Virus record (IMG/VR): IMGVR_UViG_3300046092_000062
Location: 124,001-188,000 of that record
Strand: one strand, 5' to 3'
Length of the DNA stretch: 64,000 nucleotides
Part shown: positions 2,312 through 63,462 of the stretch, one piece after another
How the letters are laid out: each line of letters opens with the position of its first letter
Position numbering within the stretch: the stretch's first letter is position 1
Made by a program: the position numbers and the translations under genes
The notes under the pieces: generated by a model
Told to the model about the DNA's origin: nothing
The model's input: the letters and a program-made list of their open reading frames with translations, nothing else
The model's database searches: none

Positions 2312-4612
2312 ATGAGTCAAATAAACGTCACGAAGAGAGACGGCCGTAAAGAGCCACTAAATTTAGAGAAGCTACACAAAGTTGTTTTTTGGGCAACCGA
2401 AGGAATTACAGGAGTTAGTGCAAGCGAAGTAGAAATCAATAGTCATGTACAATTCTACAACGGCATCAAGAGTACAGACATTCAAGAAACGCTTATCAAA
2501 AGCGCAGCAGACTTAATTAGCGAAGAATCACCAAATTACCAATATGTAGCAGGACGCTTGCTTACATATCATATCCATAAGTTAGTTTATGGAGACTTTA
2601 AGCCATGGCCATTGCTACAGTTAGTTAAACGTAACACTGACATCGGCTACTACACAAAAGAATTGTTAGAAAACTATAGCGAAGACGAGATCAATCAAAT
2701 GGACTCGTATATCAAACACGAACGTGATGAAACATTCACCTACGTGGCTATGGAACAATGGCGCGGTAAGTACCTAGTACAAAACCGTGTCACTGGCGAA
2801 ATCTTTGAAACACCACAAATTGCATACATGTTGATTGCTGCCACATTGTTTATGGCCTATCCAAAAGAAACACGTATGCAATGGATTAAGGACTACTATG
2901 ATGCTATCTCTAATTTTGATATCAGTTTGCCTACCCCTATTATGGCCGGTTTACGCACTCCACAGAAGCAGTTCAGCTCGTGCGTTCTTATCGAGTCTGG
3001 CGATAGTCTCGATAGTATCAACGCTACTTCTAGCAGCATTGTTAAGTATGTCTCACAAAAGGCAGGTATTGGAATTGGTGCTGGACGTATCCGTGCGCTT
3101 GGAAGCCCTATTCGCAATGGTGACGCATATCATACAGGCATCACACCTTTCTTAAAGCACTTTCAAACAGCCACTCGCTCATGCAGTCAAGGTGGCGTGC
3201 GTAACGGCGCAGCAACTATCTATTACCCATTGTGGCACCTAGAAGTTGAAGATATGCTTGTTTTGAAGAACAACAAAGGCACAGAGGATAACAGAGTACG
3301 CCAGATGGATTACGGCGTCCAATTCAACAAATTAATGTACGAAAGACTTATTCAAGGTGGCAATATCACCTTGTTTAGCCCCCACGACTTGCCGGAAATG
3401 TACGATGCTTTCTTTAACAACCAAGAGTTGTTTAAAGAGCTGTATGAGAAGGCAGAACGCAATACCAAGATCCGCAAGAAGACTATTCCTGCTGCGGAGT
3501 TGTTTGGTAAGTTCATGCAAGAGCGCAAGGACACTGGTCGTATCTATTTGATGAACGTGGACCATGCTAACACGCATAGCCCATTCAAAGAAGAGTTGCA
3601 CCCTGTTAAGATGAGTAACTTGTGTACTGAGATTAACTTGCCAACTGTGCCATTGATGGACATTAACGACGAAGCAGGTCGTATTGCATTGTGTACTCTT
3701 TCTGCACAGAACTGGGGTAACGTTAGAAAGCCACAAGACTTTGAACGCATGTGTACTCTAAGCGTTCGTGGCCTAGACGCATTGTTAAGCTACCAGAACT
3801 ATCCAGTTAAGGCTGCTGAGATTGCAACTAAAGAATTCCGCCCATTGGGTAACGGTATTATTAACTTTGCCTACTTCTTGGCCAAGCATGATGTATCCTA
3901 TAGCGATCCACGTGCATTGGCACTAGTTGACGAGTACGCAGAAGCATGGTCATACTACTTGATTAAAGCAAGTGCAGACTTGGCTCGAGAACAAGGTGCA
4001 TGTGAGAAGTGGGACGAGTTGAAGTATGCCGACGGTATCCTCCCAATGGACACACGCAAGAAAGAAGTTGACGAACTAGTTGAACATCAAGAGCGTATGC
4101 CTTGGCGTGCTCTACGTGAACAGATTCTAACTACAGGTATCCGCAACGCTACACTAATGGCCTTGATGCCAGCGGAAACTAGCGCACAGATCTCTAATGC
4201 CACTAACGGCATTGAACCACCAAGAAACTATGTTTCTATTAAGCAAAGCAAACACGGAGTACTAAAGCAGGTTGTACCTGAATTCCGCAAACTAAAGAAC
4301 AAATACGAATTGTTATGGGACCAACGTAGCCCAGAAGGCTACCTAAAACTATGTGCAGTATTACAAAAATGGATTGACCAGGGTATTAGCATCAACACTT
4401 CGTACAACCCTAAGTTCTACGAAGATGAAAAGATCCCTATGAGTGAGATGCTCAAGCACTTGCTAATGTGCTACAAATACGGAACTAAACAACTTTACTA
4501 CTTCAACACAAACGATGGACAAGGCGAGATTGATGTCGACAAGCTGGGCGCTACAACGCAATTACCAGAAGGTGACATGGGTCAAGAAGACTGCGATAGC
4601 TGTGTAATTTAA
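2312..4612 (+). CDS. nrdA: ribonucleotide reductase class Ia alpha subunit
   Basis: ATP-cone (VTKRDG), SSC, SNLCTEI catalytic motif, MPAETS, C-terminal CDSC. Confidence 0.98.
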   Translation: MSQINVTKRDGRKEPLNLEKLHKVVFWATEGITGVSASEVEINSHVQFYNGIKSTDIQETLIKSAADLISEESPNYQYVAGRLLTYHIHKLVYGDFKPWPLLQLVKRNTDIGYYTKELLENYSEDEINQMDSYIKHERDETFTYVAMEQWRGKYLVQNRVTGEIFETPQIAYMLIAATLFMAYPKETRMQWIKDYYDAISNFDISLPTPIMAGLRTPQKQFSSCVLIESGDSLDSINATSSSIVKYVSQKAGIGIGAGRIRALGSPIRNGDAYHTGITPFLKHFQTATRSCSQGGVRNGAATIYYPLWHLEVEDMLVLKNNKGTEDNRVRQMDYGVQFNKLMYERLIQGGNITLFSPHDLPEMYDAFFNNQELFKELYEKAERNTKIRKKTIPAAELFGKFMQERKDTGRIYLMNVDHANTHSPFKEELHPVKMSNLCTEINLPTVPLMDINDEAGRIALCTLSAQNWGNVRKPQDFERMCTLSVRGLDALLSYQNYPVKAAEIATKEFRPLGNGIINFAYFLAKHDVSYSDPRALALVDEYAEAWSYYLIKASADLAREQGACEKWDELKYADGILPMDTRKKEVDELVEHQERMPWRALREQILTTGIRNATLMALMPAETSAQISNATNGIEPPRNYVSIKQSKHGVLKQVVPEFRKLKNKYELLWDQRSPEGYLKLCAVLQKWIDQGISINTSYNPKFYEDEKIPMSEMLKHLLMCYKYGTKQLYYFNTNDGQGEIDVDKLGATTQLPEGDMGQEDCDSCVI

Positions 4613-42097: not shown

Positions 42098-43105
42098 ATG
42101 ACTACACCACGAATTGGGTTTGCCTGTAAGTTTAGTGAACTTACCCCTAAAGGCATTGAAAGTGTTCCGGAATTAAATACACGCGGCACTACTGTGGCGT
42201 GGCTAAATAGACAGAGCAAGCATATTGCAGAGGAACGTCTCTGGGATATCATGAAGCACAACATCGAATCGGCAAAACTGCTGGTAGAAAAAGTAGGAAC
42301 CCTTGAACAACATCTCAGAATGGTGCGCCTTAGCAGCGACCTTCTTCCTGTATATACCGAGCCTTCTTGGAGTTATTTTTGGCGTCAGCCTGACGTTAGG
42401 GCTTATTGCGAAAAACACTTTGCGCAGGTTGGCGCTGTTGCTCGTTGCAGCAATGTGCGTCTTAGTTTTCACCCAGGTCAATTCTGCGTTCTCGCAAGCG
42501 ATTCTGGAGATGTTGTTGAACGCTCAATCCTTGAGTTCGAATACCATGCTGATATGACCCGTTGGATGGGCTATGGACAAAAATTTCAAGACTTCAAAAT
42601 CAACGTACACATATCGGGACGCAAGGGTCCGCAGGGCATTAGAGATGTATATGGCCGTCTATCGCCTGAAGCACGTAACTGTCTAACACTAGAGAACGAG
42701 GAATACACACATGGTTTGGACGATTGTTTGTCTTTACACGATCTTGTACCTACTGTGCTCGATATTCATCATCACTGGATCCGAGAAGGTGAGTACATTG
42801 ATGCGGGCAGCGATCGTGTTAAGGCAGTTGTTGATAGCTGGCGCGGCGTGCGCCCTACTTTACACTACAGTGTTTCACGAGAAGATGTCCTTGTCGGGCA
42901 CTGTGCGAACACCTTGCCCGATCACCCAGCGTTGCTTGTAAGCGGTTACAAAAAGCAAAAACTTCGTGCTCACAGTGACTACTACTGGAACAATGCAGTT
43001 AACGAGTGGGCTGCTACGTTTACTAAAGACTTTGATGTCATGTGCGAGAGCAAGGCCAAGAACCTTGCTAGCATTAAGTTCGCGACAGTAGCTCTTCAAT
43101 CTTAG
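42098..43105 (+). CDS. uvsE: UV damage endonuclease
   Basis: RIGFAC, RLSSD, HPGQF, LENEE, DIHHH, RAHSD, ESKAK; promoter 42064-42092. Confidence 0.93.
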   Translation: MTTPRIGFACKFSELTPKGIESVPELNTRGTTVAWLNRQSKHIAEERLWDIMKHNIESAKLLVEKVGTLEQHLRMVRLSSDLLPVYTEPSWSYFWRQPDVRAYCEKHFAQVGAVARCSNVRLSFHPGQFCVLASDSGDVVERSILEFEYHADMTRWMGYGQKFQDFKINVHISGRKGPQGIRDVYGRLSPEARNCLTLENEEYTHGLDDCLSLHDLVPTVLDIHHHWIREGEYIDAGSDRVKAVVDSWRGVRPTLHYSVSREDVLVGHCANTLPDHPALLVSGYKKQKLRAHSDYYWNNAVNEWAATFTKDFDVMCESKAKNLASIKFATVALQS

Positions 43106-44165
43106 ATTCTAAACCGCGCACAAGAGACAAGTGCCAATCGGTTGACATCATAATGTTAAAGTTATGTTCAACGATTGGCCTTGCCTTTTGTAGTATTAGA
43201 TTCTGGTCTTGCTTGCTTAACCAACTCATCTGTTCACATGCTGCGGCCCAACGTTGTTGATCATCAGCAATAGAGTCGTAGCTTTCATCTATAACGGAAC
43301 CAAACGTTCGAAATCCCAACTTGCGTAAATTGCGTAGGTAGTGCTGGCCAGCAAACATAATAAACAAGCGTCTAGCAATAATGGGCTTGGCAGTCTTCTC
43401 AGTGTAGAAACTGTATCTATTATCGTAGTTGGTTTCTGCCACTACAGTGTAAGCAGTGCGGTTGTAAATATCAATGGGTATAACTTGACTGATACTCATT
43501 GCGTGGCCGTAGTACTTAACAAAGTCTACAGTCCATTTAGGATCGTTGATAAACTGCATACCACGATCCTCCCATATCCATTGTTCGCTACCCGTAGCAA
43601 AATCTACCTGGTGCTCGTTAAAGTAAGTGAGCACACGATTTTCTTGCCTTAGGTTTGCTTTTACAAATTGGTAAACAGCATCTCGGTGAGGCTTCTTTCG
43701 GCCTAGTAGGATATCAAAGTGCGATTCCTTACTGTGAACGTAATTGATTCTTCCTAGCAGCTCAGGCAAGTAATCACGATAAAAATAACGACTGGTTTCA
43801 AACCAATCGAAGTATTGATGAACAGTTGCATGTTCCAACGGTTGCTCAACGAACCCGCAAAGGTAGTAGGCAATGTTGGGACGATCGTTCTTTAGTATAA
43901 ACTCTAAGGTACTAGCATGTAGCTCAGAGCCTATAACAAAAACAAAATCGCTGATTTCGTACACTGAATCTAACTTGGCTTGAGTGTCAGATTTGAATGG
44001 ATAGGGTAGGTGAATAAACGCGATGTTCAGTGGATGCCCACTGTTTAAATAGTGACCTAGATCATCGTAAACTGCCCATTCGTTTGGAGTGAGCTTTTCA
44101 AAATGATCTAGGTGGTACCTAACCGTGTCGGAATTATCGCGAAAAACTCCGACGTTGAGAAACAT
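43074..44165 (-). CDS. putative glycosyltransferase-like protein
   Basis: VVAET, TEKTAKPI, GFRTF...IDESYD. Confidence 0.55.
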   Translation of the reverse strand: MFLNVGVFRDNSDTVRYHLDHFEKLTPNEWAVYDDLGHYLNSGHPLNIAFIHLPYPFKSDTQAKLDSVYEISDFVFVIGSELHASTLEFILKNDRPNIAYYLCGFVEQPLEHATVHQYFDWFETSRYFYRDYLPELLGRINYVHSKESHFDILLGRKKPHRDAVYQFVKANLRQENRVLTYFNEHQVDFATGSEQWIWEDRGMQFINDPKWTVDFVKYYGHAMSISQVIPIDIYNRTAYTVVAETNYDNRYSFYTEKTAKPIIARRLFIMFAGQHYLRNLRKLGFRTFGSVIDESYDSIADDQQRWAAACEQMSWLSKQDQNLILQKARPIVEHNFNIMMSTDWHLSLVRGLESKIEELLSRT

Positions 44166-44467
44166 TACTTGCTAGCAGGTTTCTTGGCAGGTTTCTTAGC
44201 TGGCTTTGGATCGCCGGCTTTGGCCAATGCTTTCTTAGCAGGTGCCTTAGGTGCAGCTGGCTTCTTTGCAGGAGCAGCTTTTGCCTTTGGTGCAGCTGGC
44301 TTCTTTGCAGGAGCAGCTTTTGGTGCAGCAACAGGCTTTTTTACTGGTGCGGCAACTGGTGCTTCGATTTTGTATGGTGCTGCATTAACAACTTCTACTT
44401 TTGTTTCTTCAATTCTTGGTGCCGGAGTTGGCTTGCCAAAAAAGAATTCTTTGATTGCTTTAAACAT
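44165..44467 (-). CDS. histone H1-like Ala/Lys/Pro repeat protein
   Basis: Repeated KAAPAKKPAAP; amphipathic MFKAIKEFFFG N-terminus. Confidence 0.75.
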   Translation of the reverse strand: MFKAIKEFFFGKPTPAPRIEETKVEVVNAAPYKIEAPVAAPVKKPVAAPKAAPAKKPAAPKAKAAPAKKPAAPKAPAKKALAKAGDPKPAKKPAKKPASK

Positions 44468-44533
44468 TGGATCTCCTTAAACATGTTTCAATGTATATGT
44501 ATTTAATTAGTGACAGCTCACTAGGAAAATTTG

Positions 44534-44563
44534 TTGACTTTTGCTGCGGCGCAGCATTATAAT
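44534..44563 (+). promoter_or_regulatory. sigma70 promoter with a PhaR-like palindromic operator in its spacer
   Basis: TTGACT-N18-TATAAT enclosing TGCTGCG-G-CGCAGCA (44542-44556). Confidence 0.7.
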
Positions 44564-44635
44564 AACTAAATACTTTGTACGGTGCTGCATAGGGCGGGCC
44601 GTAAAAGAAGTATTCGTCTATTTAGGAGAAACAAC

Positions 44636-44905
44636 ATGTTTATTACAGACACATTCATCGACACCGTATCTAACGGTAAAAAACAATTCGTTAACACAGT
44701 ATTCGCAAACAACCAAGCAGTCGCCAAGGCACTGAACGGGTTCGTTGACGCACAAGCTGAGTACACAAAGAAGGCAGCTAAGGCCGGTTCCGACACAGTT
44801 GCTCAATTGACTAGCGAAGCAGTCAAGGCAGCTACCGAAGCCAGCAAGTTTGACTTCGCCAAAGCCACAAAAGACTTCAGCGAGAAGTTCAGCTTTAAAA
44901 AGTAA
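44636..44905 (+). CDS. phasin-like PHA-granule-associated protein
   Basis: 89-aa Ala/Lys-rich amphipathic helical protein (FVDAQAEYTKKAAK); operator context. Confidence 0.6.
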   Translation: MFITDTFIDTVSNGKKQFVNTVFANNQAVAKALNGFVDAQAEYTKKAAKAGSDTVAQLTSEAVKAATEASKFDFAKATKDFSEKFSFKK

Positions 44906-44926
44906 TCGTTGCAGCAACGCAACACT

Positions 44927-44951
44927 AGCCCCTTAATTGGGGCTTTCTTTT
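44927..44951 (+). terminator. intrinsic terminator
   Basis: AGCCCC-TTAATT-GGGGCT + T run. Confidence 0.8.
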
Positions 44952-45000
44952 GGCCAATTGATGTTATACTTTCCGCATTGCAATTAACAAAGGAAATACT

Positions 45001-45522
45001 GTGGCAAACAAAATGGAAAACTTAGAACTCGATGTTGCACACTTTGTAGCGTTTGCGTCACACCTTCCTGGGTTTAAAAATCAAGACCGTGGTACCATTA
45101 AATGGATGTTAATGGAAATGGGCATAGTTGAAGTAAGTACTGCATTTGAGCGGGTCCTAGCTGAGCTGGGCGGACATACATTAGTGAGCAAAGATAATGG
45201 TGACTTGTATAAGAACGGCAAGTACAGCGATGCTAAACTTAGCACGGTGAGAACTTCCAGTAGGGGGATGGCATATTCTGCACCAGTTACAAATATTTTC
45301 AACAAGACCGGTGCATTACGAGTGCAAGTGTTTGAGCGCAAGCAATATAAGTTTTATTATTTTGCTATCCCCCGTCACGCATACATGCACATACCCAAGA
45401 CAAGTAACATCGAAATTCCGTTTGAACTCGATGGCACACCGCGGACTAACAATAATTGCACAGTCAACTGGTGGAAATACAAGGTAGATACCCTTCAAGA
45501 GGCAGCTACAAAATATAGCTAA
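45001..45522 (+). CDS. hypothetical protein, possible PD-(D/E)XK nuclease
   Basis: FE...GDL...SDAK pattern. Confidence 0.5.
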   Translation: MANKMENLELDVAHFVAFASHLPGFKNQDRGTIKWMLMEMGIVEVSTAFERVLAELGGHTLVSKDNGDLYKNGKYSDAKLSTVRTSSRGMAYSAPVTNIFNKTGALRVQVFERKQYKFYYFAIPRHAYMHIPKTSNIEIPFELDGTPRTNNNCTVNWWKYKVDTLQEAATKYS

Positions 45523-45564
45523 ATTTCGGTTGACCAGAAATGATTTTGGTTATATAATACACAC

Positions 45565-45888
45565 ATGAAACAAATTATTGCACTCTGTATCGTTCTTGCA
45601 ATCGCTGGCACTGCCCAAGCTAAAGGTGGTGGTGGTGGAGGTGGACATGGTGGTCACGCCAGTTCTGGTGGACATGCAAGCTCAAGTCACGCAGCAGCAC
45701 CAGCAAAAGCACCTGCTCCTGTTGCACCTGCTCCAGCAAAAAGTACTACTTCGCCAAGCAAAAGTACTACAGAAAGTCCTAGCACTGTGACTAGTCCTTC
45801 GTACTTCTATATGCCATGGAACATCTGGCATCAGAAAAGCAATGGCAGCAAAGATTGCGATAAAAACAAAGACAAAAACTGCAAATAA
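45565..45888 (+). CDS. secreted Gly/Ser/Pro-rich protein
   Basis: Signal peptide; promoter 45530-45558. Confidence 0.7.
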   Translation: MKQIIALCIVLAIAGTAQAKGGGGGGGHGGHASSGGHASSSHAAAPAKAPAPVAPAPAKSTTSPSKSTTESPSTVTSPSYFYMPWNIWHQKSNGSKDCDKNKDKNCK

Positions 45889-45951
45889 TGGTTGTCCATT
45901 AATGATTTTGGTTGTATAATAGATACATAGCAAGCAAAAACAGGAGTTGAG

Positions 45952-46374
45952 ATGAGCACAAACGCAACAATCGGAATTATGCACGGTGACAAATGCAAAC
46001 ACATTTACCTGCATAGCGATGGTTATCTGGACTACGCTGGCAAGGTGTTACTGGCAAACTATGACAGCACCAAAGCTCAGTTCCTAGTTGCCCAAGGTTC
46101 CTGCTCTATGCTTGGCAAAGAGATTGGCGAGAAGATTGATTTTAGCGATCGTCTAGAGTACGACGAATATCATGTTGCCAAGCAATGTCGCTTTTACAAG
46201 CGTGATCGCGATGAGTCCGGCGTTGACTTTCAAGTTGCATTTAGCATGGAAGAGTTGTTGGCTAGCACACAAGCTCACTACACTTACATCATGAAAGACG
46301 GTGTGTGGTACGTTAGCTTGGGTGGTGGTCCTTTGCAAGTGTTGGCAGACGCTATTGAAGCAGAACTGGAATAA
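45952..46374 (+). CDS. conserved phage early protein (MSTxA.I...Y.HxDGY)
   Basis: AGGAG RBS; promoter 45892-45920. Confidence 0.75.
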   Translation: MSTNATIGIMHGDKCKHIYLHSDGYLDYAGKVLLANYDSTKAQFLVAQGSCSMLGKEIGEKIDFSDRLEYDEYHVAKQCRFYKRDRDESGVDFQVAFSMEELLASTQAHYTYIMKDGVWYVSLGGGPLQVLADAIEAELE

Positions 46375-62058: not shown

Positions 62059-63462
62059 ATGAAACTCTCTAAAAACATCATTCTCAACACCGACAGCTAC
62101 AAAGTGTCAATGGGCCGCCAATACCCAGCTGGCACTACCAATGTATTCAGCTACATTGCAGCACGTGGTGGTAAATTCACATTCACGCAGTTTGTTGGAC
62201 TGCAAATGTTCATCAAGGAGTATTTGCTTGAACAAATCACCAAAGAAGACATCGACATTGCAGAAGAAATCCTCACAGCGCACGGCGAGCCATTTGACCG
62301 CAGCATGTGGGACTACATTGTCGAAGCACACAACGGCTACTTGCCAGTGGTCATTAAAGCCGTACCAGAAGGCACTGTTGTGCCAGTTGGCAACGCATTA
62401 GTCACAATCGAAAACACTGACCCCAAGTGCCACGGTTTAACTACTTGGTTGGAAACTCCATTGCTTCGCGCAGTGTGGTACCCAACTACAGTCTCAACAC
62501 AAAGCAAGTACATTAAAAACATCTTGCAAGAATACTTGGAGAAATCAGGTGATCCTGCTTCTATCGGTTTTAAACTGCACGATTTTGGTGCTCGTGGTGT
62601 ATCTTCAATGGAGAGTGCTGGTATTGGGGGTGCAGCCCACTTGGTCAACTTCATGGGCACGGACACTATTACTGGTGTTCTTTACGCTCGTGAATATTAC
62701 AATGCTGGTATTGCTGGATTTAGCATTCCTGCAGCCGAACACAGTACTATCACTAGTTGGGGTCGCGCAGGCGAACTGAACGCTTACAGCAACATGGTTA
62801 CACAGTTTGGCAAGCCAGGCGGCATTGTTGCAGTTGTGTCTGACAGCTATAACATCTACGAAGCATGTAAAATGTGGAGCACTGGTGCGCTGAAACAGCA
62901 AGTGATTGATTCAGGTGCCACAGTTGTTATCCGTCCTGACTCAGGTGATCCTGTTGACGTGATGCCAAAGATGATTGCAATTCTTGCAGAAGGTTTTGGT
63001 TACACTACAAACGACAAGGGCTACAAAGTTCTCAACAATGTGCGTATGATCTGGGGTGATGGTATTAACCCATTGTCAATCCAAAGCATCTTGCGCACAA
63101 TGGTTGACGTGGGTGGTTGGAGTGCAGACAACTTTGCGTTTGGTATGGGCGGTGCTTTGTTGCAAGCAATTGATCGTGATACACAAAAATGGGCTATGAA
63201 ATGCTCAAGTGCATGTATCGATGGTGAATGGGTTGATGTTTACAAAGACCCAATCACTGACAGCGGCAAAGCTTCACTCAAAGGTCGTGTCAAGTTGTGG
63301 ACCAACAGTGGTGGCGAGTTTGCGACAAGTGTGCAAGCCCCTACTGGTTGGAGCGACAAGGGCATCGGTGGTTGGGTTGATGCAATGAAAACTGTCTACA
63401 TGGATGGTGCATTGTTTAACGAAATCACCTTTGAAGAAGTTCGTGCTAACAGCATGAAATAA
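62059..63462 (+). CDS. nadV: nicotinamide phosphoribosyltransferase (NAMPT)
   Basis: TDSYK, LHDFGARG, PAAEHS, VSDSY, RPDSGDP, GDG, FGMGG.L. Confidence 0.96.
   Translation: MKLSKNIILNTDSYKVSMGRQYPAGTTNVFSYIAARGGKFTFTQFVGLQMFIKEYLLEQITKEDIDIAEEILTAHGEPFDRSMWDYIVEAHNGYLPVVIKAVPEGTVVPVGNALVTIENTDPKCHGLTTWLETPLLRAVWYPTTVSTQSKYIKNILQEYLEKSGDPASIGFKLHDFGARGVSSMESAGIGGAAHLVNFMGTDTITGVLYAREYYNAGIAGFSIPAAEHSTITSWGRAGELNAYSNMVTQFGKPGGIVAVVSDSYNIYEACKMWSTGALKQQVIDSGATVVIRPDSGDPVDVMPKMIAILAEGFGYTTNDKGYKVLNNVRMIWGDGINPLSIQSILRTMVDVGGWSADNFAFGMGGALLQAIDRDTQKWAMKCSSACIDGEWVDVYKDPITDSGKASLKGRVKLWTNSGGEFATSVQAPTGWSDKGIGGWVDAMKTVYMDGALFNEITFEEVRANSMK

What the first reader, a model, noticed from the sequence alone, without database searches (positions are those of the whole stretch)
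44165..44924. Phasin-like gene under a PhaR-type operator, divergent from an AAKP histone-like protein: candidate PHA-granule hijack module
Seen: a perfect palindrome TGCTGCG-G-CGCAGCA lies between the -35 and -10 of the promoter for an 89-aa amphipathic protein. A related GCAACGCAACA follows the gene. The divergent gene is almost entirely KAAPAKKPAAP repeats behind an amphipathic N-terminal helix. Known: PhaR represses phasin genes at TGC-N3-GCA-type boxes (reported consensus TGCRNYGCASMA, matched here) and is titrated away by PHA; Pseudomonas PhaF joins a phasin domain to an AAKP DNA-binding tail. Inference: the phage senses host carbon storage through host PhaR and deploys a split PhaF-like pair to mobilise or position granules.
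Basis: partly seen in the sequence, partly recalled or inferred. Interest (0 to 1): 0.8.

Follow-up and report, generated by a model that had tools for sequence, protein, structure and literature searches.

The report
Jumbo-phage gene under host PhaR operator
A large clade of uncultured freshwater jumbo phages carries a small, heavily transcribed gene whose promoter is overlapped by what looks exactly like the host's PhaR (storage-polymer sensor) operator, so the phage probably reads the host's carbon-storage state; whether the encoded protein is a true granule-coating phasin is likely but unproven.

Summary
TGCTGCGGCGCAGCA (44542-44556) lies in the spacer of an 11/12 sigma-70 promoter (TTGACT-18-TATAAT), ahead of an 89-aa amphipathic helical protein (44636-44905). 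A 100-aa Ala/Lys/Pro-rich gene (44165-44467) lies divergently upstream.

The window is part of a 320.8-kb metagenomic jumbo phage. The box is single-copy in promoter context: the genome's other two exact matches lack promoter-like flanks. It recurs (TGYTGC-N3-GCARCA, at most 1 mismatch) upstream of the homologous gene in 43 of 67 non-redundant phage loci. In 4 of 5 other near-complete 320-350 kb genomes it is the only exact copy.

The same box sits upstream of phasin genes and of phaR in Polynucleobacter and other Burkholderiales. It matches published, footprinted PhaR/PhbF consensus sequences. The PhaR-operator reading is therefore strongly supported in silico.

The phasin reading is weaker. 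Phasin_2 is the only recurrent Pfam hit but stays below threshold, and profile-profile comparison with host phasins is negative. Language-model neighbours are mostly phasins.

Metatranscriptome contigs show an abundant monocistronic RNA ending at the predicted terminator. The "split PhaF pair / granule hijack" remains speculation. The downstream GCAACGCAACA is not conserved.

Two further conserved, gene-specific elements were found: an upstream palindrome and a covarying 5'-UTR hairpin.

The parts
44165..44467 (-). Divergent gene for a 100-aa Ala/Lys/Pro-rich basic protein (pI 10.4) with an N-terminal amphipathic segment MFKAIKEFFFGK. Its stop overlaps the start of the 363-aa gene 43074-44165 (TAATG).
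   Evidence: A divergent K/P-rich-tail ORF starts within 450 nt upstream in 40 of 65 non-redundant loci. No Pfam/PHROG hit. RNA contig depth 66 in run X19.
44508..44523 (.). Second palindrome (IR2), TAGTGA-N4-TCACTA. It lies about 33-34 bp centre-to-centre upstream of the PhaR-type box. The factor that binds it is unknown.
   Evidence: Unique in the 320.8-kb genome. Present (at most 1 mismatch) in 46 of 67 non-redundant loci at near-constant spacing from the box. Found in only 1 of 21 Polynucleobacter genomes, so not a host regulon motif there.
44534..44563 (+). Sigma-70-type promoter: TTGACT (44534-44539), 18-nt spacer, TATAAT (44558-44563).
   Evidence: 11 of 12 matches. Homologous loci keep a TAYAAT -10.
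44542..44556 (.). PhaR-type operator: perfect palindrome TGCTGCG-G-CGCAGCA, an instance of TGYTGC-N3-GCARCA, overlapping the core promoter.
   Evidence: Same motif upstream of phaP/phaR in Burkholderiales. Published consensus sequences: PMC3206438, PMC12849132, PMC6201568, PMC12542648.
44571..44612 (+). Conserved 5'-UTR stem-loop at or near the mRNA 5' end. The core hairpin is 44578-44603: inner stem CUGC/GCGG, loop AUAGG.
   Evidence: fold. Covariation on 42 sequences: 95.3% of cells paired, 7 of 10 pairs with changes on both sides, 0 of 500 shuffles reach the covariation score, slid controls at most 53% paired. Unique in the genome. No Rfam family.
44636..44905 (+). Gene for the 89-aa (9.6 kDa, pI 9.2) amphipathic three-helix protein. 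It founds a large phage-restricted family and is a candidate viral phasin.
   Evidence: RNA contig 44586-44953 at depth 111.7.
44907..44924 (.). Small hairpin after the stop codon.
44927..44952 (+). Intrinsic terminator (AGCCCC-TTAATT-GGGGCT plus T-run).
   Evidence: The metatranscriptome contig ends at 44953.

Best explanation
The 89-aa gene is an early, host-RNA-polymerase-transcribed gene of an uncultured freshwater jumbo phage, probably infecting PHB-storing Burkholderiales such as Polynucleobacter. It has been wired into the host PhaR regulon. Free host PhaR would bind the single TGYTGC-N3-GCARCA operator that overlaps the core promoter and would block transcription. When the host holds PHB granules, PhaR is sequestered on the polymer and the promoter fires. 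The resulting short monocistronic mRNA has a 5'-terminal stem-loop, a strong Shine-Dalgarno sequence and an intrinsic terminator, and it accumulates to a high level. The product is a small basic amphipathic helical protein that most likely acts like a phasin: it would coat the hydrophobic surface of PHB granules and so change access of host proteins (phasins, PhaR, depolymerase, synthase) to the stored carbon during infection. Shown here: the cis-architecture, its conservation, its identity with host phaP/phaR promoter boxes and with published PhaR sites, and the abundance of the RNA. Inferred: PhaR binding, the host, granule binding and the physiological outcome. Sub-claims: PhaR-type operator about 0.8; product is a granule-binding phasin analogue about 0.45.
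For: (1) The box overlaps the core promoter. (2) It matches the footprinted Herbaspirillum PhbF consensus TG[N]TGC[N]3GCAA. It matches Ralstonia YTKNTGCRNYGCANMAR at 13 of 14 specified positions (count made here). It matches Bradyrhizobium TGCRNYGCASMA exactly, and its 12-mer is identical to the site that paper lists beside the PhaR-repressed cyoA. (3) In 21 genomes of the genus of a Polynucleobacter MAG, 16 of 32 phasin loci and 11 of 19 phaR loci carry the box (at most 1 mismatch) just upstream. In a Burkholderiales sample, 27 of 29 phasin loci have TGC-N3-GCA cores upstream. One MAG genome has only 4 exact boxes in 2.8 Mb: one at a phasin promoter, one on a phage-like contig and two inside ORFs. 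(4) 43 of 67 non-redundant phage loci keep the box at -88 to -97 from the ATG (most loci), against 4 background hits in 437 kb. It is the only exact copy per genome in 4 of 5 other 320-350 kb phages. The arms are conserved and the centre is free. (5) No phage PhaR was found. (6) Phasin_2 is the only recurrent Pfam hit. 70 of 100 nearest named ESM-Atlas clusters are Phasin_2; PHB_acc and PhaE clusters also appear. The protein is helical and amphipathic. (7) Metatranscriptome contigs cover 44586-44953 at depth 111.7, against 2.7-5 for the 363-aa gene.
Against: The Phasin_2 score is below the curated cut-off (14.5 against 24.9 bits; best relative E about 1e-4). NCBIfam gives equally weak unrelated hits. 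hhalign and hmmsearch against 32 Polynucleobacter phasins show nothing. Fold searches return only generic helical hairpins. The host is not established: two related contigs sit in MAGs of Polynucleobacter and of Haliscomenobacter, and the latter lacks phasins. About a third of homologous loci lack the canonical box; some have a 4-nt-spaced variant or none. A second, phage-specific palindrome (IR2) implies another regulator. The phage has no PHB enzymes. The RNA evidence comes from assembled contigs of related strains, not raw reads, and DNA carry-over cannot be fully excluded.
Confidence: 0.55

Rival explanations
1. The promoter is PhaR-controlled, but the product is not a granule-coating phasin. 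It would be a PHB-state-dependent phage effector of another kind: for example a binder or antagonist of PhaR or of another host protein, a membrane- or nucleoid-associated factor, or a regulator that uses PHB status only as a proxy for host energy state.
For: All the operator evidence applies. Phasin homology never passes a curated threshold and is negative against host phasins. The phage has no PHB enzymes.
Against: Phasin_2 is the only family hit repeatedly across diverged members. PHA-granule families dominate the language-model neighbours. Size, charge and amphipathic helices fit phasins. In bacteria the archetypal strongly PhaR-repressed genes are phasins.
Confidence: 0.25
2. The palindrome is the operator of a phage-encoded or other non-PhaR regulator, perhaps acting together with IR2. 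Its likeness to PhaR boxes would then be convergent or inherited from an old capture and no longer used by PhaR.
For: A second conserved, phage-specific palindrome lies 33-34 bp away and is not a Polynucleobacter motif. About a third of loci lack the canonical box. The host is unproven.
Against: No PHB_acc_N-type protein is found in the phage genome. The box equals the phaP/phaR promoter box of Burkholderiales down to the RNY centre preference and the footprinted consensus sequences. A phage regulator with a single target per 320-350 kb genome is possible but unusual.
Confidence: 0.12
3. The operator's main role is as a decoy. As phage DNA replicates, the hundreds of copies of a high-affinity PhaR site would titrate the scarce host repressor and derepress the host PHB regulon. 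Regulation of the 89-aa gene would be secondary.
For: One strong, near-perfect site per genome, conserved across genomes. Only inference beyond that.
Against: The site is always locked to this gene's core promoter at a fixed distance, together with a conserved UTR and gene. That argues for cis-regulation. A decoy could sit anywhere.
Confidence: 0.05
4. Chance palindrome with no function.
For: Short GC-rich palindromes occur by chance. Matches with at most 1 mismatch number 12 per genome.
Against: The position is conserved in 43 of 67 diverged loci against 4 hits in 437 kb of background. It is the sole exact copy per genome in four other phages.
Confidence: 0.02

Closest known systems
Bacterial phaP (phasin) promoters repressed by PhaR/PhbF/AniA: Ralstonia eutropha phaP1, Herbaspirillum seropedicae phaP1/phbF, Bradyrhizobium phaP1/phaP4
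   Same: A palindromic TGC-N3-GCA operator with the same extended arms (TG-N-TGC-N3-GCAA) overlaps the -35/-10 region of a strong sigma-70 promoter in front of a small amphipathic protein gene (PMC3206438, PMC12849132, PMC6201568). The same box was found here upstream of phaP and phaR in Polynucleobacter.
   Different: The promoter is on a phage genome. It has one box instead of the usual two spaced about 55-60 bp apart. It is accompanied by a phage-specific palindrome (IR2) and a conserved 5'-UTR hairpin. Binding by PhaR is not demonstrated.
Phasin_2 family phasins (PF09361), including activator-type phasins such as ApdA of Rhodospirillum rubrum (the latter from general knowledge, not checked here)
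   Same: Small, Ala/Lys-rich, all-helical and amphipathic. Recurrent weak Phasin_2 matches in register (residues 11-61 to profile positions 3-53). PHA-granule families dominate the language-model neighbours.
   Different: Half the length of typical Burkholderiales phasins (89 against 180-200 aa). Scores are below the gathering threshold. No profile-profile similarity to host phasins. The family is confined to viral contigs.
PhaF of Pseudomonas putida and PhaM of Ralstonia eutropha: granule-nucleoid tethers with AAKP/PAKKA lysine-rich tails (general knowledge, not checked here)
   Same: The divergent neighbour has a long Ala/Lys/Pro repeat tail of the same composition. It is linked to the 89-aa gene in about 60% of loci.
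   Different: It has no phasin or PhaC-binding domain. Its N-terminus is only a short amphipathic segment, replaced by a transmembrane helix in some relatives. It is a separate gene, apparently with its own upstream element, and its stop overlaps the start of a 363-aa gene. DNA or granule binding is untested.
Phage auxiliary genes wired to host nutrient regulators: Pho boxes upstream of cyanophage pstS/phoA and NtcA sites in cyanophage promoters (PMC3037559, PMC10976474); LexA boxes in temperate phages (general knowledge)
   Same: A host transcription-factor site in a phage promoter lets the phage read host physiological state.
   Different: The sensor here would be PhaR, which reports a storage polymer rather than a nutrient or DNA damage. 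The controlled gene is not a recognisable copy of a host gene. No report linking phasins or PhaR to jumbo phages turned up in the paper library.

Membership tests
PhaR/PhbF operator (member of a PhaR regulon) | Palindrome with TGC-N3-GCA core matching experimentally derived consensus sequences | tested here: met
   44545-44556 equals TGCRNYGCASMA. 44542-44556 fits TG[N]TGC[N]3GCA-type. 13 of 14 specified positions of YTKNTGCRNYGCANMAR match.
PhaR/PhbF operator (member of a PhaR regulon) | Site overlaps the core promoter, so that binding represses | tested here: met
   The box lies in the spacer of TTGACT-18-TATAAT. In most relatives it covers the -35 region 10 nt upstream of TAYAAT.
PhaR/PhbF operator (member of a PhaR regulon) | Same motif upstream of phaP and phaR in the (candidate) host lineage | tested here: met
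   16 of 32 phasin loci and 11 of 19 phaR loci in 21 Polynucleobacter-genus genomes. 27 of 29 Burkholderiales phasin loci have cores upstream.
PhaR/PhbF operator (member of a PhaR regulon) | Conserved in orthologous loci beyond background | tested here: met
   43 of 67 loci against 4 hits in 437 kb. Sole exact copy in 4 of 5 other genomes.
PhaR/PhbF operator (member of a PhaR regulon) | Physical binding by PhaR and derepression by PHB | not testable with these tools
   Needs EMSA or footprinting and reporter assays.
PhaR/PhbF operator (member of a PhaR regulon) | Host encodes PhaR and makes PHB | tested here: inconclusive
   The host is unknown. PhaR is found in 18 of 21 Polynucleobacter-genus genomes and phasins in 21 of 21. 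Host assignment rests on one binned 6-kb contig, GC content and the motif itself.
Phasin_2 (PF09361) | Score at or above the Pfam gathering threshold (24.9 bits) | tested here: not met
   14.5 bits, E 0.041 for the window protein. Best family member E about 1.2e-4.
Phasin_2 (PF09361) | Profile-profile similarity to bona fide phasins | tested here: not met
   hhalign probability at most 9% against three Polynucleobacter phasin subfamilies; hmmsearch scores below 10 bits. No full-database HHsearch was possible.
Phasin_2 (PF09361) | Consistent family-specific signal across diverged members | tested here: inconclusive
   Phasin_2 is hit by 21 of 39 and 12 of 63 members, while any other family is hit by at most 4 and 1. 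70 of 100 nearest named Atlas clusters are Phasin_2, at scores of 0.81-0.86, which the tool rates as leads only.
Phasin_2 (PF09361) | Small amphipathic alpha-helical protein | tested here: met
   Helices 2-22, 27-71 and 74-85, pLDDT 82. Hydrophobic moment above 998 of 1000 shuffles.
Phasin_2 (PF09361) | Binds PHA granules in vivo or in vitro | not testable with these tools
   Needs localisation and binding assays.
PhaF/PhaM-type granule-nucleoid tether (for the AKP-rich neighbour) | Lys/Ala/Pro-rich histone-H1-like tail | tested here: met
   71% Ala+Lys+Pro, pI 10.4.
PhaF/PhaM-type granule-nucleoid tether (for the AKP-rich neighbour) | Phasin or PhaC-interacting domain in the same protein | tested here: not met
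   No Pfam/PHROG domain. The N-terminus is a 12-residue amphipathic segment, or a TM helix in relatives. The Atlas search is uninformative.
PhaF/PhaM-type granule-nucleoid tether (for the AKP-rich neighbour) | Co-regulated with the phasin-like gene | tested here: inconclusive
   Divergent neighbour in 40 of 65 loci, and both are abundant in RNA contigs. But a separate conserved TAAATA element precedes its SD, and no sigma-70 consensus promoter was found for it.

The most novel reading that the evidence does not exclude
A widespread clade of freshwater jumbo phages senses the host's intracellular carbon-storage polymer through the host repressor PhaR. In PHB-loaded cells only, it switches on a new virus-specific phasin family that takes over the surface of PHB granules, possibly with the neighbouring polycationic AKP protein. 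This would redirect stored carbon and reducing power to phage production. It would be the first viral phasin and the first case of a phage reading a storage-granule sensor.
Probability: 0.4. Interest if true: 0.85.

Novelty: new variant of a known kind. Interest (0 to 1): 0.72.

Why it matters
Phages are known to plug auxiliary genes into host nutrient regulons (Pho, NtcA, LexA). No example is known to me, or was found in the searched literature, of a phage reading the PHB-granule sensor PhaR or encoding a phasin. PHB is a major carbon and redox reserve in freshwater Burkholderiales.

A phage switch keyed to it would link viral infection outcome to host storage state. It would give a concrete, testable mechanism: one 15-bp site, one 89-aa protein. 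It would also assign a function to a family of more than 650 protein clusters (at 90% identity), found on hundreds of jumbo-phage contigs, that is currently annotated only as hypothetical. The box could also serve as a host-prediction marker for PhaR-bearing hosts.

Tried and rejected
(1) The downstream 'second box' (44910-44924) is not conserved in any of 67 relatives and is compatible with chance.

(2) The box as a phage-wide promoter motif is rejected. The genome holds only 3 exact matches, and only this one has promoter-like flanks. The exact box occurs once per genome in five other phages, and in four of them that copy lies at this gene.

(3) IR2 as a host regulon motif is rejected for Polynucleobacter: 1 of 21 genomes, fewer than the reversed-pattern control. 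CRP/FNR-like and LacI-like readings were considered by eye and dropped, because the half-site spacing is N4 and the centre is variable.

(4) Recent capture of a host phasin is rejected. There is no profile similarity to 32 Polynucleobacter phasins.

(5) Structure route: Foldseek against PDB, AFDB clusters, Swiss-Prot models and the ESM Atlas gave only generic helical hairpins. The PDB sequence-profile search gave nothing below E 0.1.

(6) Rfam gave no match for the UTR.

(7) GenBank phages hold no homologue of the 89-aa protein and no Polynucleobacter-type phasin. Distant structural-protein relatives are jumbo phages of Stenotrophomonas, Xanthomonas and Ralstonia, among others.

(8) Phage-encoded PhaR, PhaC and two PHB-depolymerase families were not found.

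(9) Atlas and Pfam searches of the AKP protein were uninformative.

(10) The profile searches enlarged the family but did not reach named bacterial proteins in the listed part.
Full report
WHAT IS THERE. The window is bases 124001-188000 of a 320,767-bp viral record (IMG/VR class, about 92% complete, 43.8% G+C). It encodes ribonucleotide reductase, NAMPT, UvdE, clamp-loader-like and tail proteins, so it is a jumbo phage. Its distant cultured relatives are jumbo myoviruses of Stenotrophomonas, Xanthomonas and Ralstonia, among others.

At the finding's coordinates the sequence shows the following, left to right:
- a 100-aa Ala/Lys/Pro-rich gene on the minus strand (44165-44467);
- a 168-bp intergenic region;
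- in that region, a palindrome TAGTGA-N4-TCACTA (IR2, 44508-44523);
- a near-consensus sigma-70 promoter, TTGACT (44534-44539), 18 nt, TATAAT (44558-44563);
- the perfect palindrome TGCTGCG-G-CGCAGCA (44542-44556) inside the promoter spacer;
- a 65-nt leader that folds into a stem-loop (44571-44612);
- AGGAG (44624-44628);
- an 89-aa ORF (44636-44905);
- a small hairpin (44907-44924);
- an intrinsic terminator (44927-44944 plus a T-run).

IS IT MORE THAN CHANCE. In the whole phage genome, TGYTGC-N3-GCARCA matches exactly three times. Only this copy lies in a promoter-like context; the flanks of the other two read like coding sequence. IR2 occurs once in the genome.

The 89-aa protein founds a large family:
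- 106 clusters at 90% identity with the single sequence;
- 659 clusters with a profile;
- 416 clusters at 50% identity in an exhaustive HMM search;
- 322 confirmed loci in IMG/VR, many on contigs of 260-366 kb.

In GTDB species genomes it was found only on two MAG contigs. It was not found in 50,697 GenBank phage records.

I compared the 130-200 nt upstream of 67 non-redundant loci. The box is exact in 33 and has at most one mismatch in 43, at -88 to -97 from the ATG in most. The background is 4 hits in 437 kb of flanking phage DNA. The arms are nearly invariant, while the central triplet is free apart from an R-N-Y preference.

In four of five other near-complete 320-350 kb genomes, the exact box occurs once per genome, and that copy is the one upstream of this gene. 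A further seven or so loci carry a related palindrome with a 4-nt centre (ATGTGCGGTCGCAGCAT type). About ten loci have a plain TTGAYT -35 and no box.

WHOSE OPERATOR IS IT. Published PhaR sites fit:
- Herbaspirillum seropedicae PhbF protects a region containing TG[N]TGC[N]3GCAA (PMC3206438).
- Ralstonia eutropha sites give YTKNTGCRNYGCANMAR. Sites next to the -35 and -10 boxes repress phaP1 (PMC12849132).
- Bradyrhizobium gives TGCRNYGCASMA. That paper lists TGCGGCGCAGCA, identical to 44545-44556, beside cyoA among its PhaR-repressed genes that carry a consensus-like site (PMC6201568).
- Sinorhizobium gives YGC-RNY-GCR with AT-rich arms (PMC12542648).

I then tested the motif in real genomes. 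One related phage contig is binned in a Polynucleobacter MAG. That MAG has three Phasin_2 genes, and one of them has TGTTGCGTCGCAACA and ATTGCAGTGCAACA upstream. The whole 2.8-Mb MAG has four exact boxes: that phasin promoter, the phage-like contig, and two inside ORFs.

In 21 genomes of that genus, 16 of 32 phasin loci carry the box (at most 1 mismatch) within 300 nt upstream. PhaR is present in 18 of the 21, and 11 of 19 phaR loci have the box 60-170 nt upstream of the PHB_acc_N domain. That is the classic phaP-plus-autoregulated-phaR pattern.

In 29 phasin loci sampled across Burkholderiales, 27 have TGC-N3-GCA cores upstream, usually two about 55-60 nt apart. The phage has no PHB_acc_N protein of its own.

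So the phage box is, in sequence and promoter position, a Burkholderiales PhaR operator. This step is comparative inference; binding has not been shown.

WHAT IS THE PROTEIN. It is 9.6 kDa with pI 9.2, and contains 18% Ala, 15% Lys and 11% Phe. It is predicted as three helices (2-22, 27-71, 74-85; pLDDT 82). It is significantly amphipathic.

Evidence on whether it is a phasin:
- Pfam gives Phasin_2 at E 0.041 (14.5 bits; cut-off 24.9), in register from the N-terminus.
- Across relatives, Phasin_2 is the only family hit repeatedly: 21 of 39 members (next best 4) and 12 of 63 more diverged members (all others 1), with best E about 1.2e-4.
- Among named ESM-Atlas clusters, 70 of the 100 nearest carry Phasin_2. 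PHB_acc and PhaE clusters also appear, but the scores (0.81-0.86) are only leads.
- Against this, NCBIfam gives equally weak unrelated hits.
- hhalign and hmmsearch against 32 Polynucleobacter phasins are negative.
- Fold searches are non-specific.

I therefore do not file it as a Phasin_2 member. I consider 'works like a phasin' the most likely function, because composition, weak homology and regulation all point the same way.

EXPRESSION. Assembled contigs from four freshwater metatranscriptome runs were laid on 43000-46000. In run X19, a 369-nt contig of a roughly 95%-identical strain spans 44586-44953 at depth 111.7. That is the leader hairpin to the end of the terminator T-run, and nothing more. 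The 363-aa gene upstream has depth 2.7-5, and the AKP gene contig has depth 66. Run X20 shows the same ranking (about 40-66 against 4-6). A contig in X24 starts at 44585.

The uneven depth argues for RNA rather than carried-over DNA. Still, these are contigs, so this is supportive evidence and not proof. It fits a short, abundant monocistronic mRNA.

OTHER CIS ELEMENTS. The leader hairpin is strongly supported by covariation on 42 sequences:
- 95.3% of cells are paired;
- 7 of 10 pairs show changes on both sides;
- the closing inner pair is C-G, G-C or A-U;
- no shuffle out of 500 reaches the covariation score;
- slid controls reach at most 53% paired.

The hairpin is unique in the genome and matches no Rfam family. 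In most loci it starts at the predicted +1. In the window's sub-type the -10 lies 9-10 nt further upstream, and an extra outer stem keeps the 5' end paired. This suggests a 5'-terminal stabiliser or a protein-binding operator.

IR2 is kept in 46 of 67 loci at a fixed 33-34 bp from the box, but it is not a Polynucleobacter motif. Its ligand is unknown.

THE AKP NEIGHBOUR. A divergent ORF with a Lys/Pro-rich tail starts within 450 nt upstream in 40 of 65 loci. Its N-terminus is either M-F/L-x-K-I-K-E-F-x-F-G-K-P ... A-P-Y-K-V-E or, in other phages, a transmembrane helix. A conserved TAAATA element lies 8-35 nt before its SD, and its stop overlaps the start of the 363-aa gene.

The composition recalls PhaF and PhaM tails (general knowledge). 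However, there is no phasin domain, and no evidence of co-regulation beyond proximity and RNA abundance. A membrane- or surface-anchored polycation is all that can be said.

MODEL AND STATUS. Shown: the architecture, its conservation, its identity with the host-type PhaR box, and the abundant short RNA. Inferred: host PhaR represses the promoter in PHB-free cells and is titrated off by PHB; the product coats granules; the consequence for PHB use. The phage encodes no PHB synthase, depolymerase or PhaR, so any effect must act through host enzymes. Rivals are listed with probabilities in the rival explanations.

NOVELTY. Host-regulator sites in phage promoters are known, for example Pho boxes and NtcA sites in cyanophages (PMC3037559, PMC10976474) and LexA boxes. 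A PhaR-operated phage gene and a viral phasin were not found in the searched literature. I rate it a new variant of a known kind, with high interest because it is widespread, sharply defined and directly testable.

Noticed in passing
window 44508-44523: Palindrome TAGTGA-N4-TCACTA (IR2). It is unique in the 320.8-kb genome and conserved in 46 of 67 homologous loci, at a fixed 33-34 bp from the PhaR-type box. It is essentially absent from 21 Polynucleobacter genomes. Its binding factor is unknown (a phage regulator?).
   Followed up: partly
window 44571-44612 (core 44578-44603): Conserved 5'-UTR stem-loop with strong covariation (inner stem CUGN/N'CGG, loop AUAGG). It is unique in the genome, matches no Rfam family, and starts at or near the predicted +1. 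Contigs from two independent metatranscriptome runs begin at 44585/44586, inside its 5' arm, which may mark a processing site.
   Followed up: partly
window 45001-45522: A 173-aa ORF with no Pfam/PHROG hit is absent from relatives whose flanking genes are 81-100% identical (L001/L002/L003). In those, the next gene follows the 89-aa gene directly. It looks like a strain-specific insertion between the terminator and the next sigma-70 promoter (TTGACC-17-TATAAT at about 45529-45557).
   Followed up: partly
L014, L017, L036, L053, L054, L075, L078 (about 90-115 nt upstream of the match start): A subset of related phages carries a variant palindrome with a 4-nt centre (ATGCTGCGACCGCACAT / ATGTGCGGTCGCAGCAT; two copies in L053) in place of the N3 box. 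About ten loci have a plain TTGAYT -35 and no box. This may reflect different hosts or PhaR variants.
   Followed up: no
window 44165-44467 and L004-L007, L010, L016, L048, L049, L073, L076: The AKP-rich protein's N-terminus alternates between a short amphipathic segment (MFxKIKEFxFGKP...APYKVE) and a hydrophobic transmembrane-like helix (MEIIxxLxVxAVxGY...) in different phages. A conserved TAAATA element (reminiscent of T4 late promoters) precedes its SD. Its stop overlaps the start of the 363-aa gene (TAATG at 44163-44167).
   Followed up: partly
L082 and L083 (genome contigs): The only hits for the family in the GTDB species genomes are two MAG contigs from one study, binned as Haliscomenobacter (70 kb) and Polynucleobacter (6 kb). 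They are probably phage contigs swept into bins. The Haliscomenobacter MAG has no Phasin_2 gene.
   Followed up: partly
window 45565-45888: A 107-aa ORF with a signal-peptide-like N-terminus followed by Gly/His/Ser/Ala/Pro low-complexity sequence (GGGGGGGHGGHASSGGHASSSH...). It sits behind its own sigma-70-type promoter, and its homologues directly follow the 89-aa gene in the closest relatives.
   Followed up: no
whole genome G000: 51 full sigma-70-type promoter matches (TTGAC[ATC]-N16-18-TAYAAT) on both strands, enriched upstream of crude gene calls. The phage seems to rely on host RNA polymerase for many genes. The window also holds UvdE (42098-43105), NrdA-like RNR (2312-4612) and NAMPT (62059-63462).
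   Followed up: no
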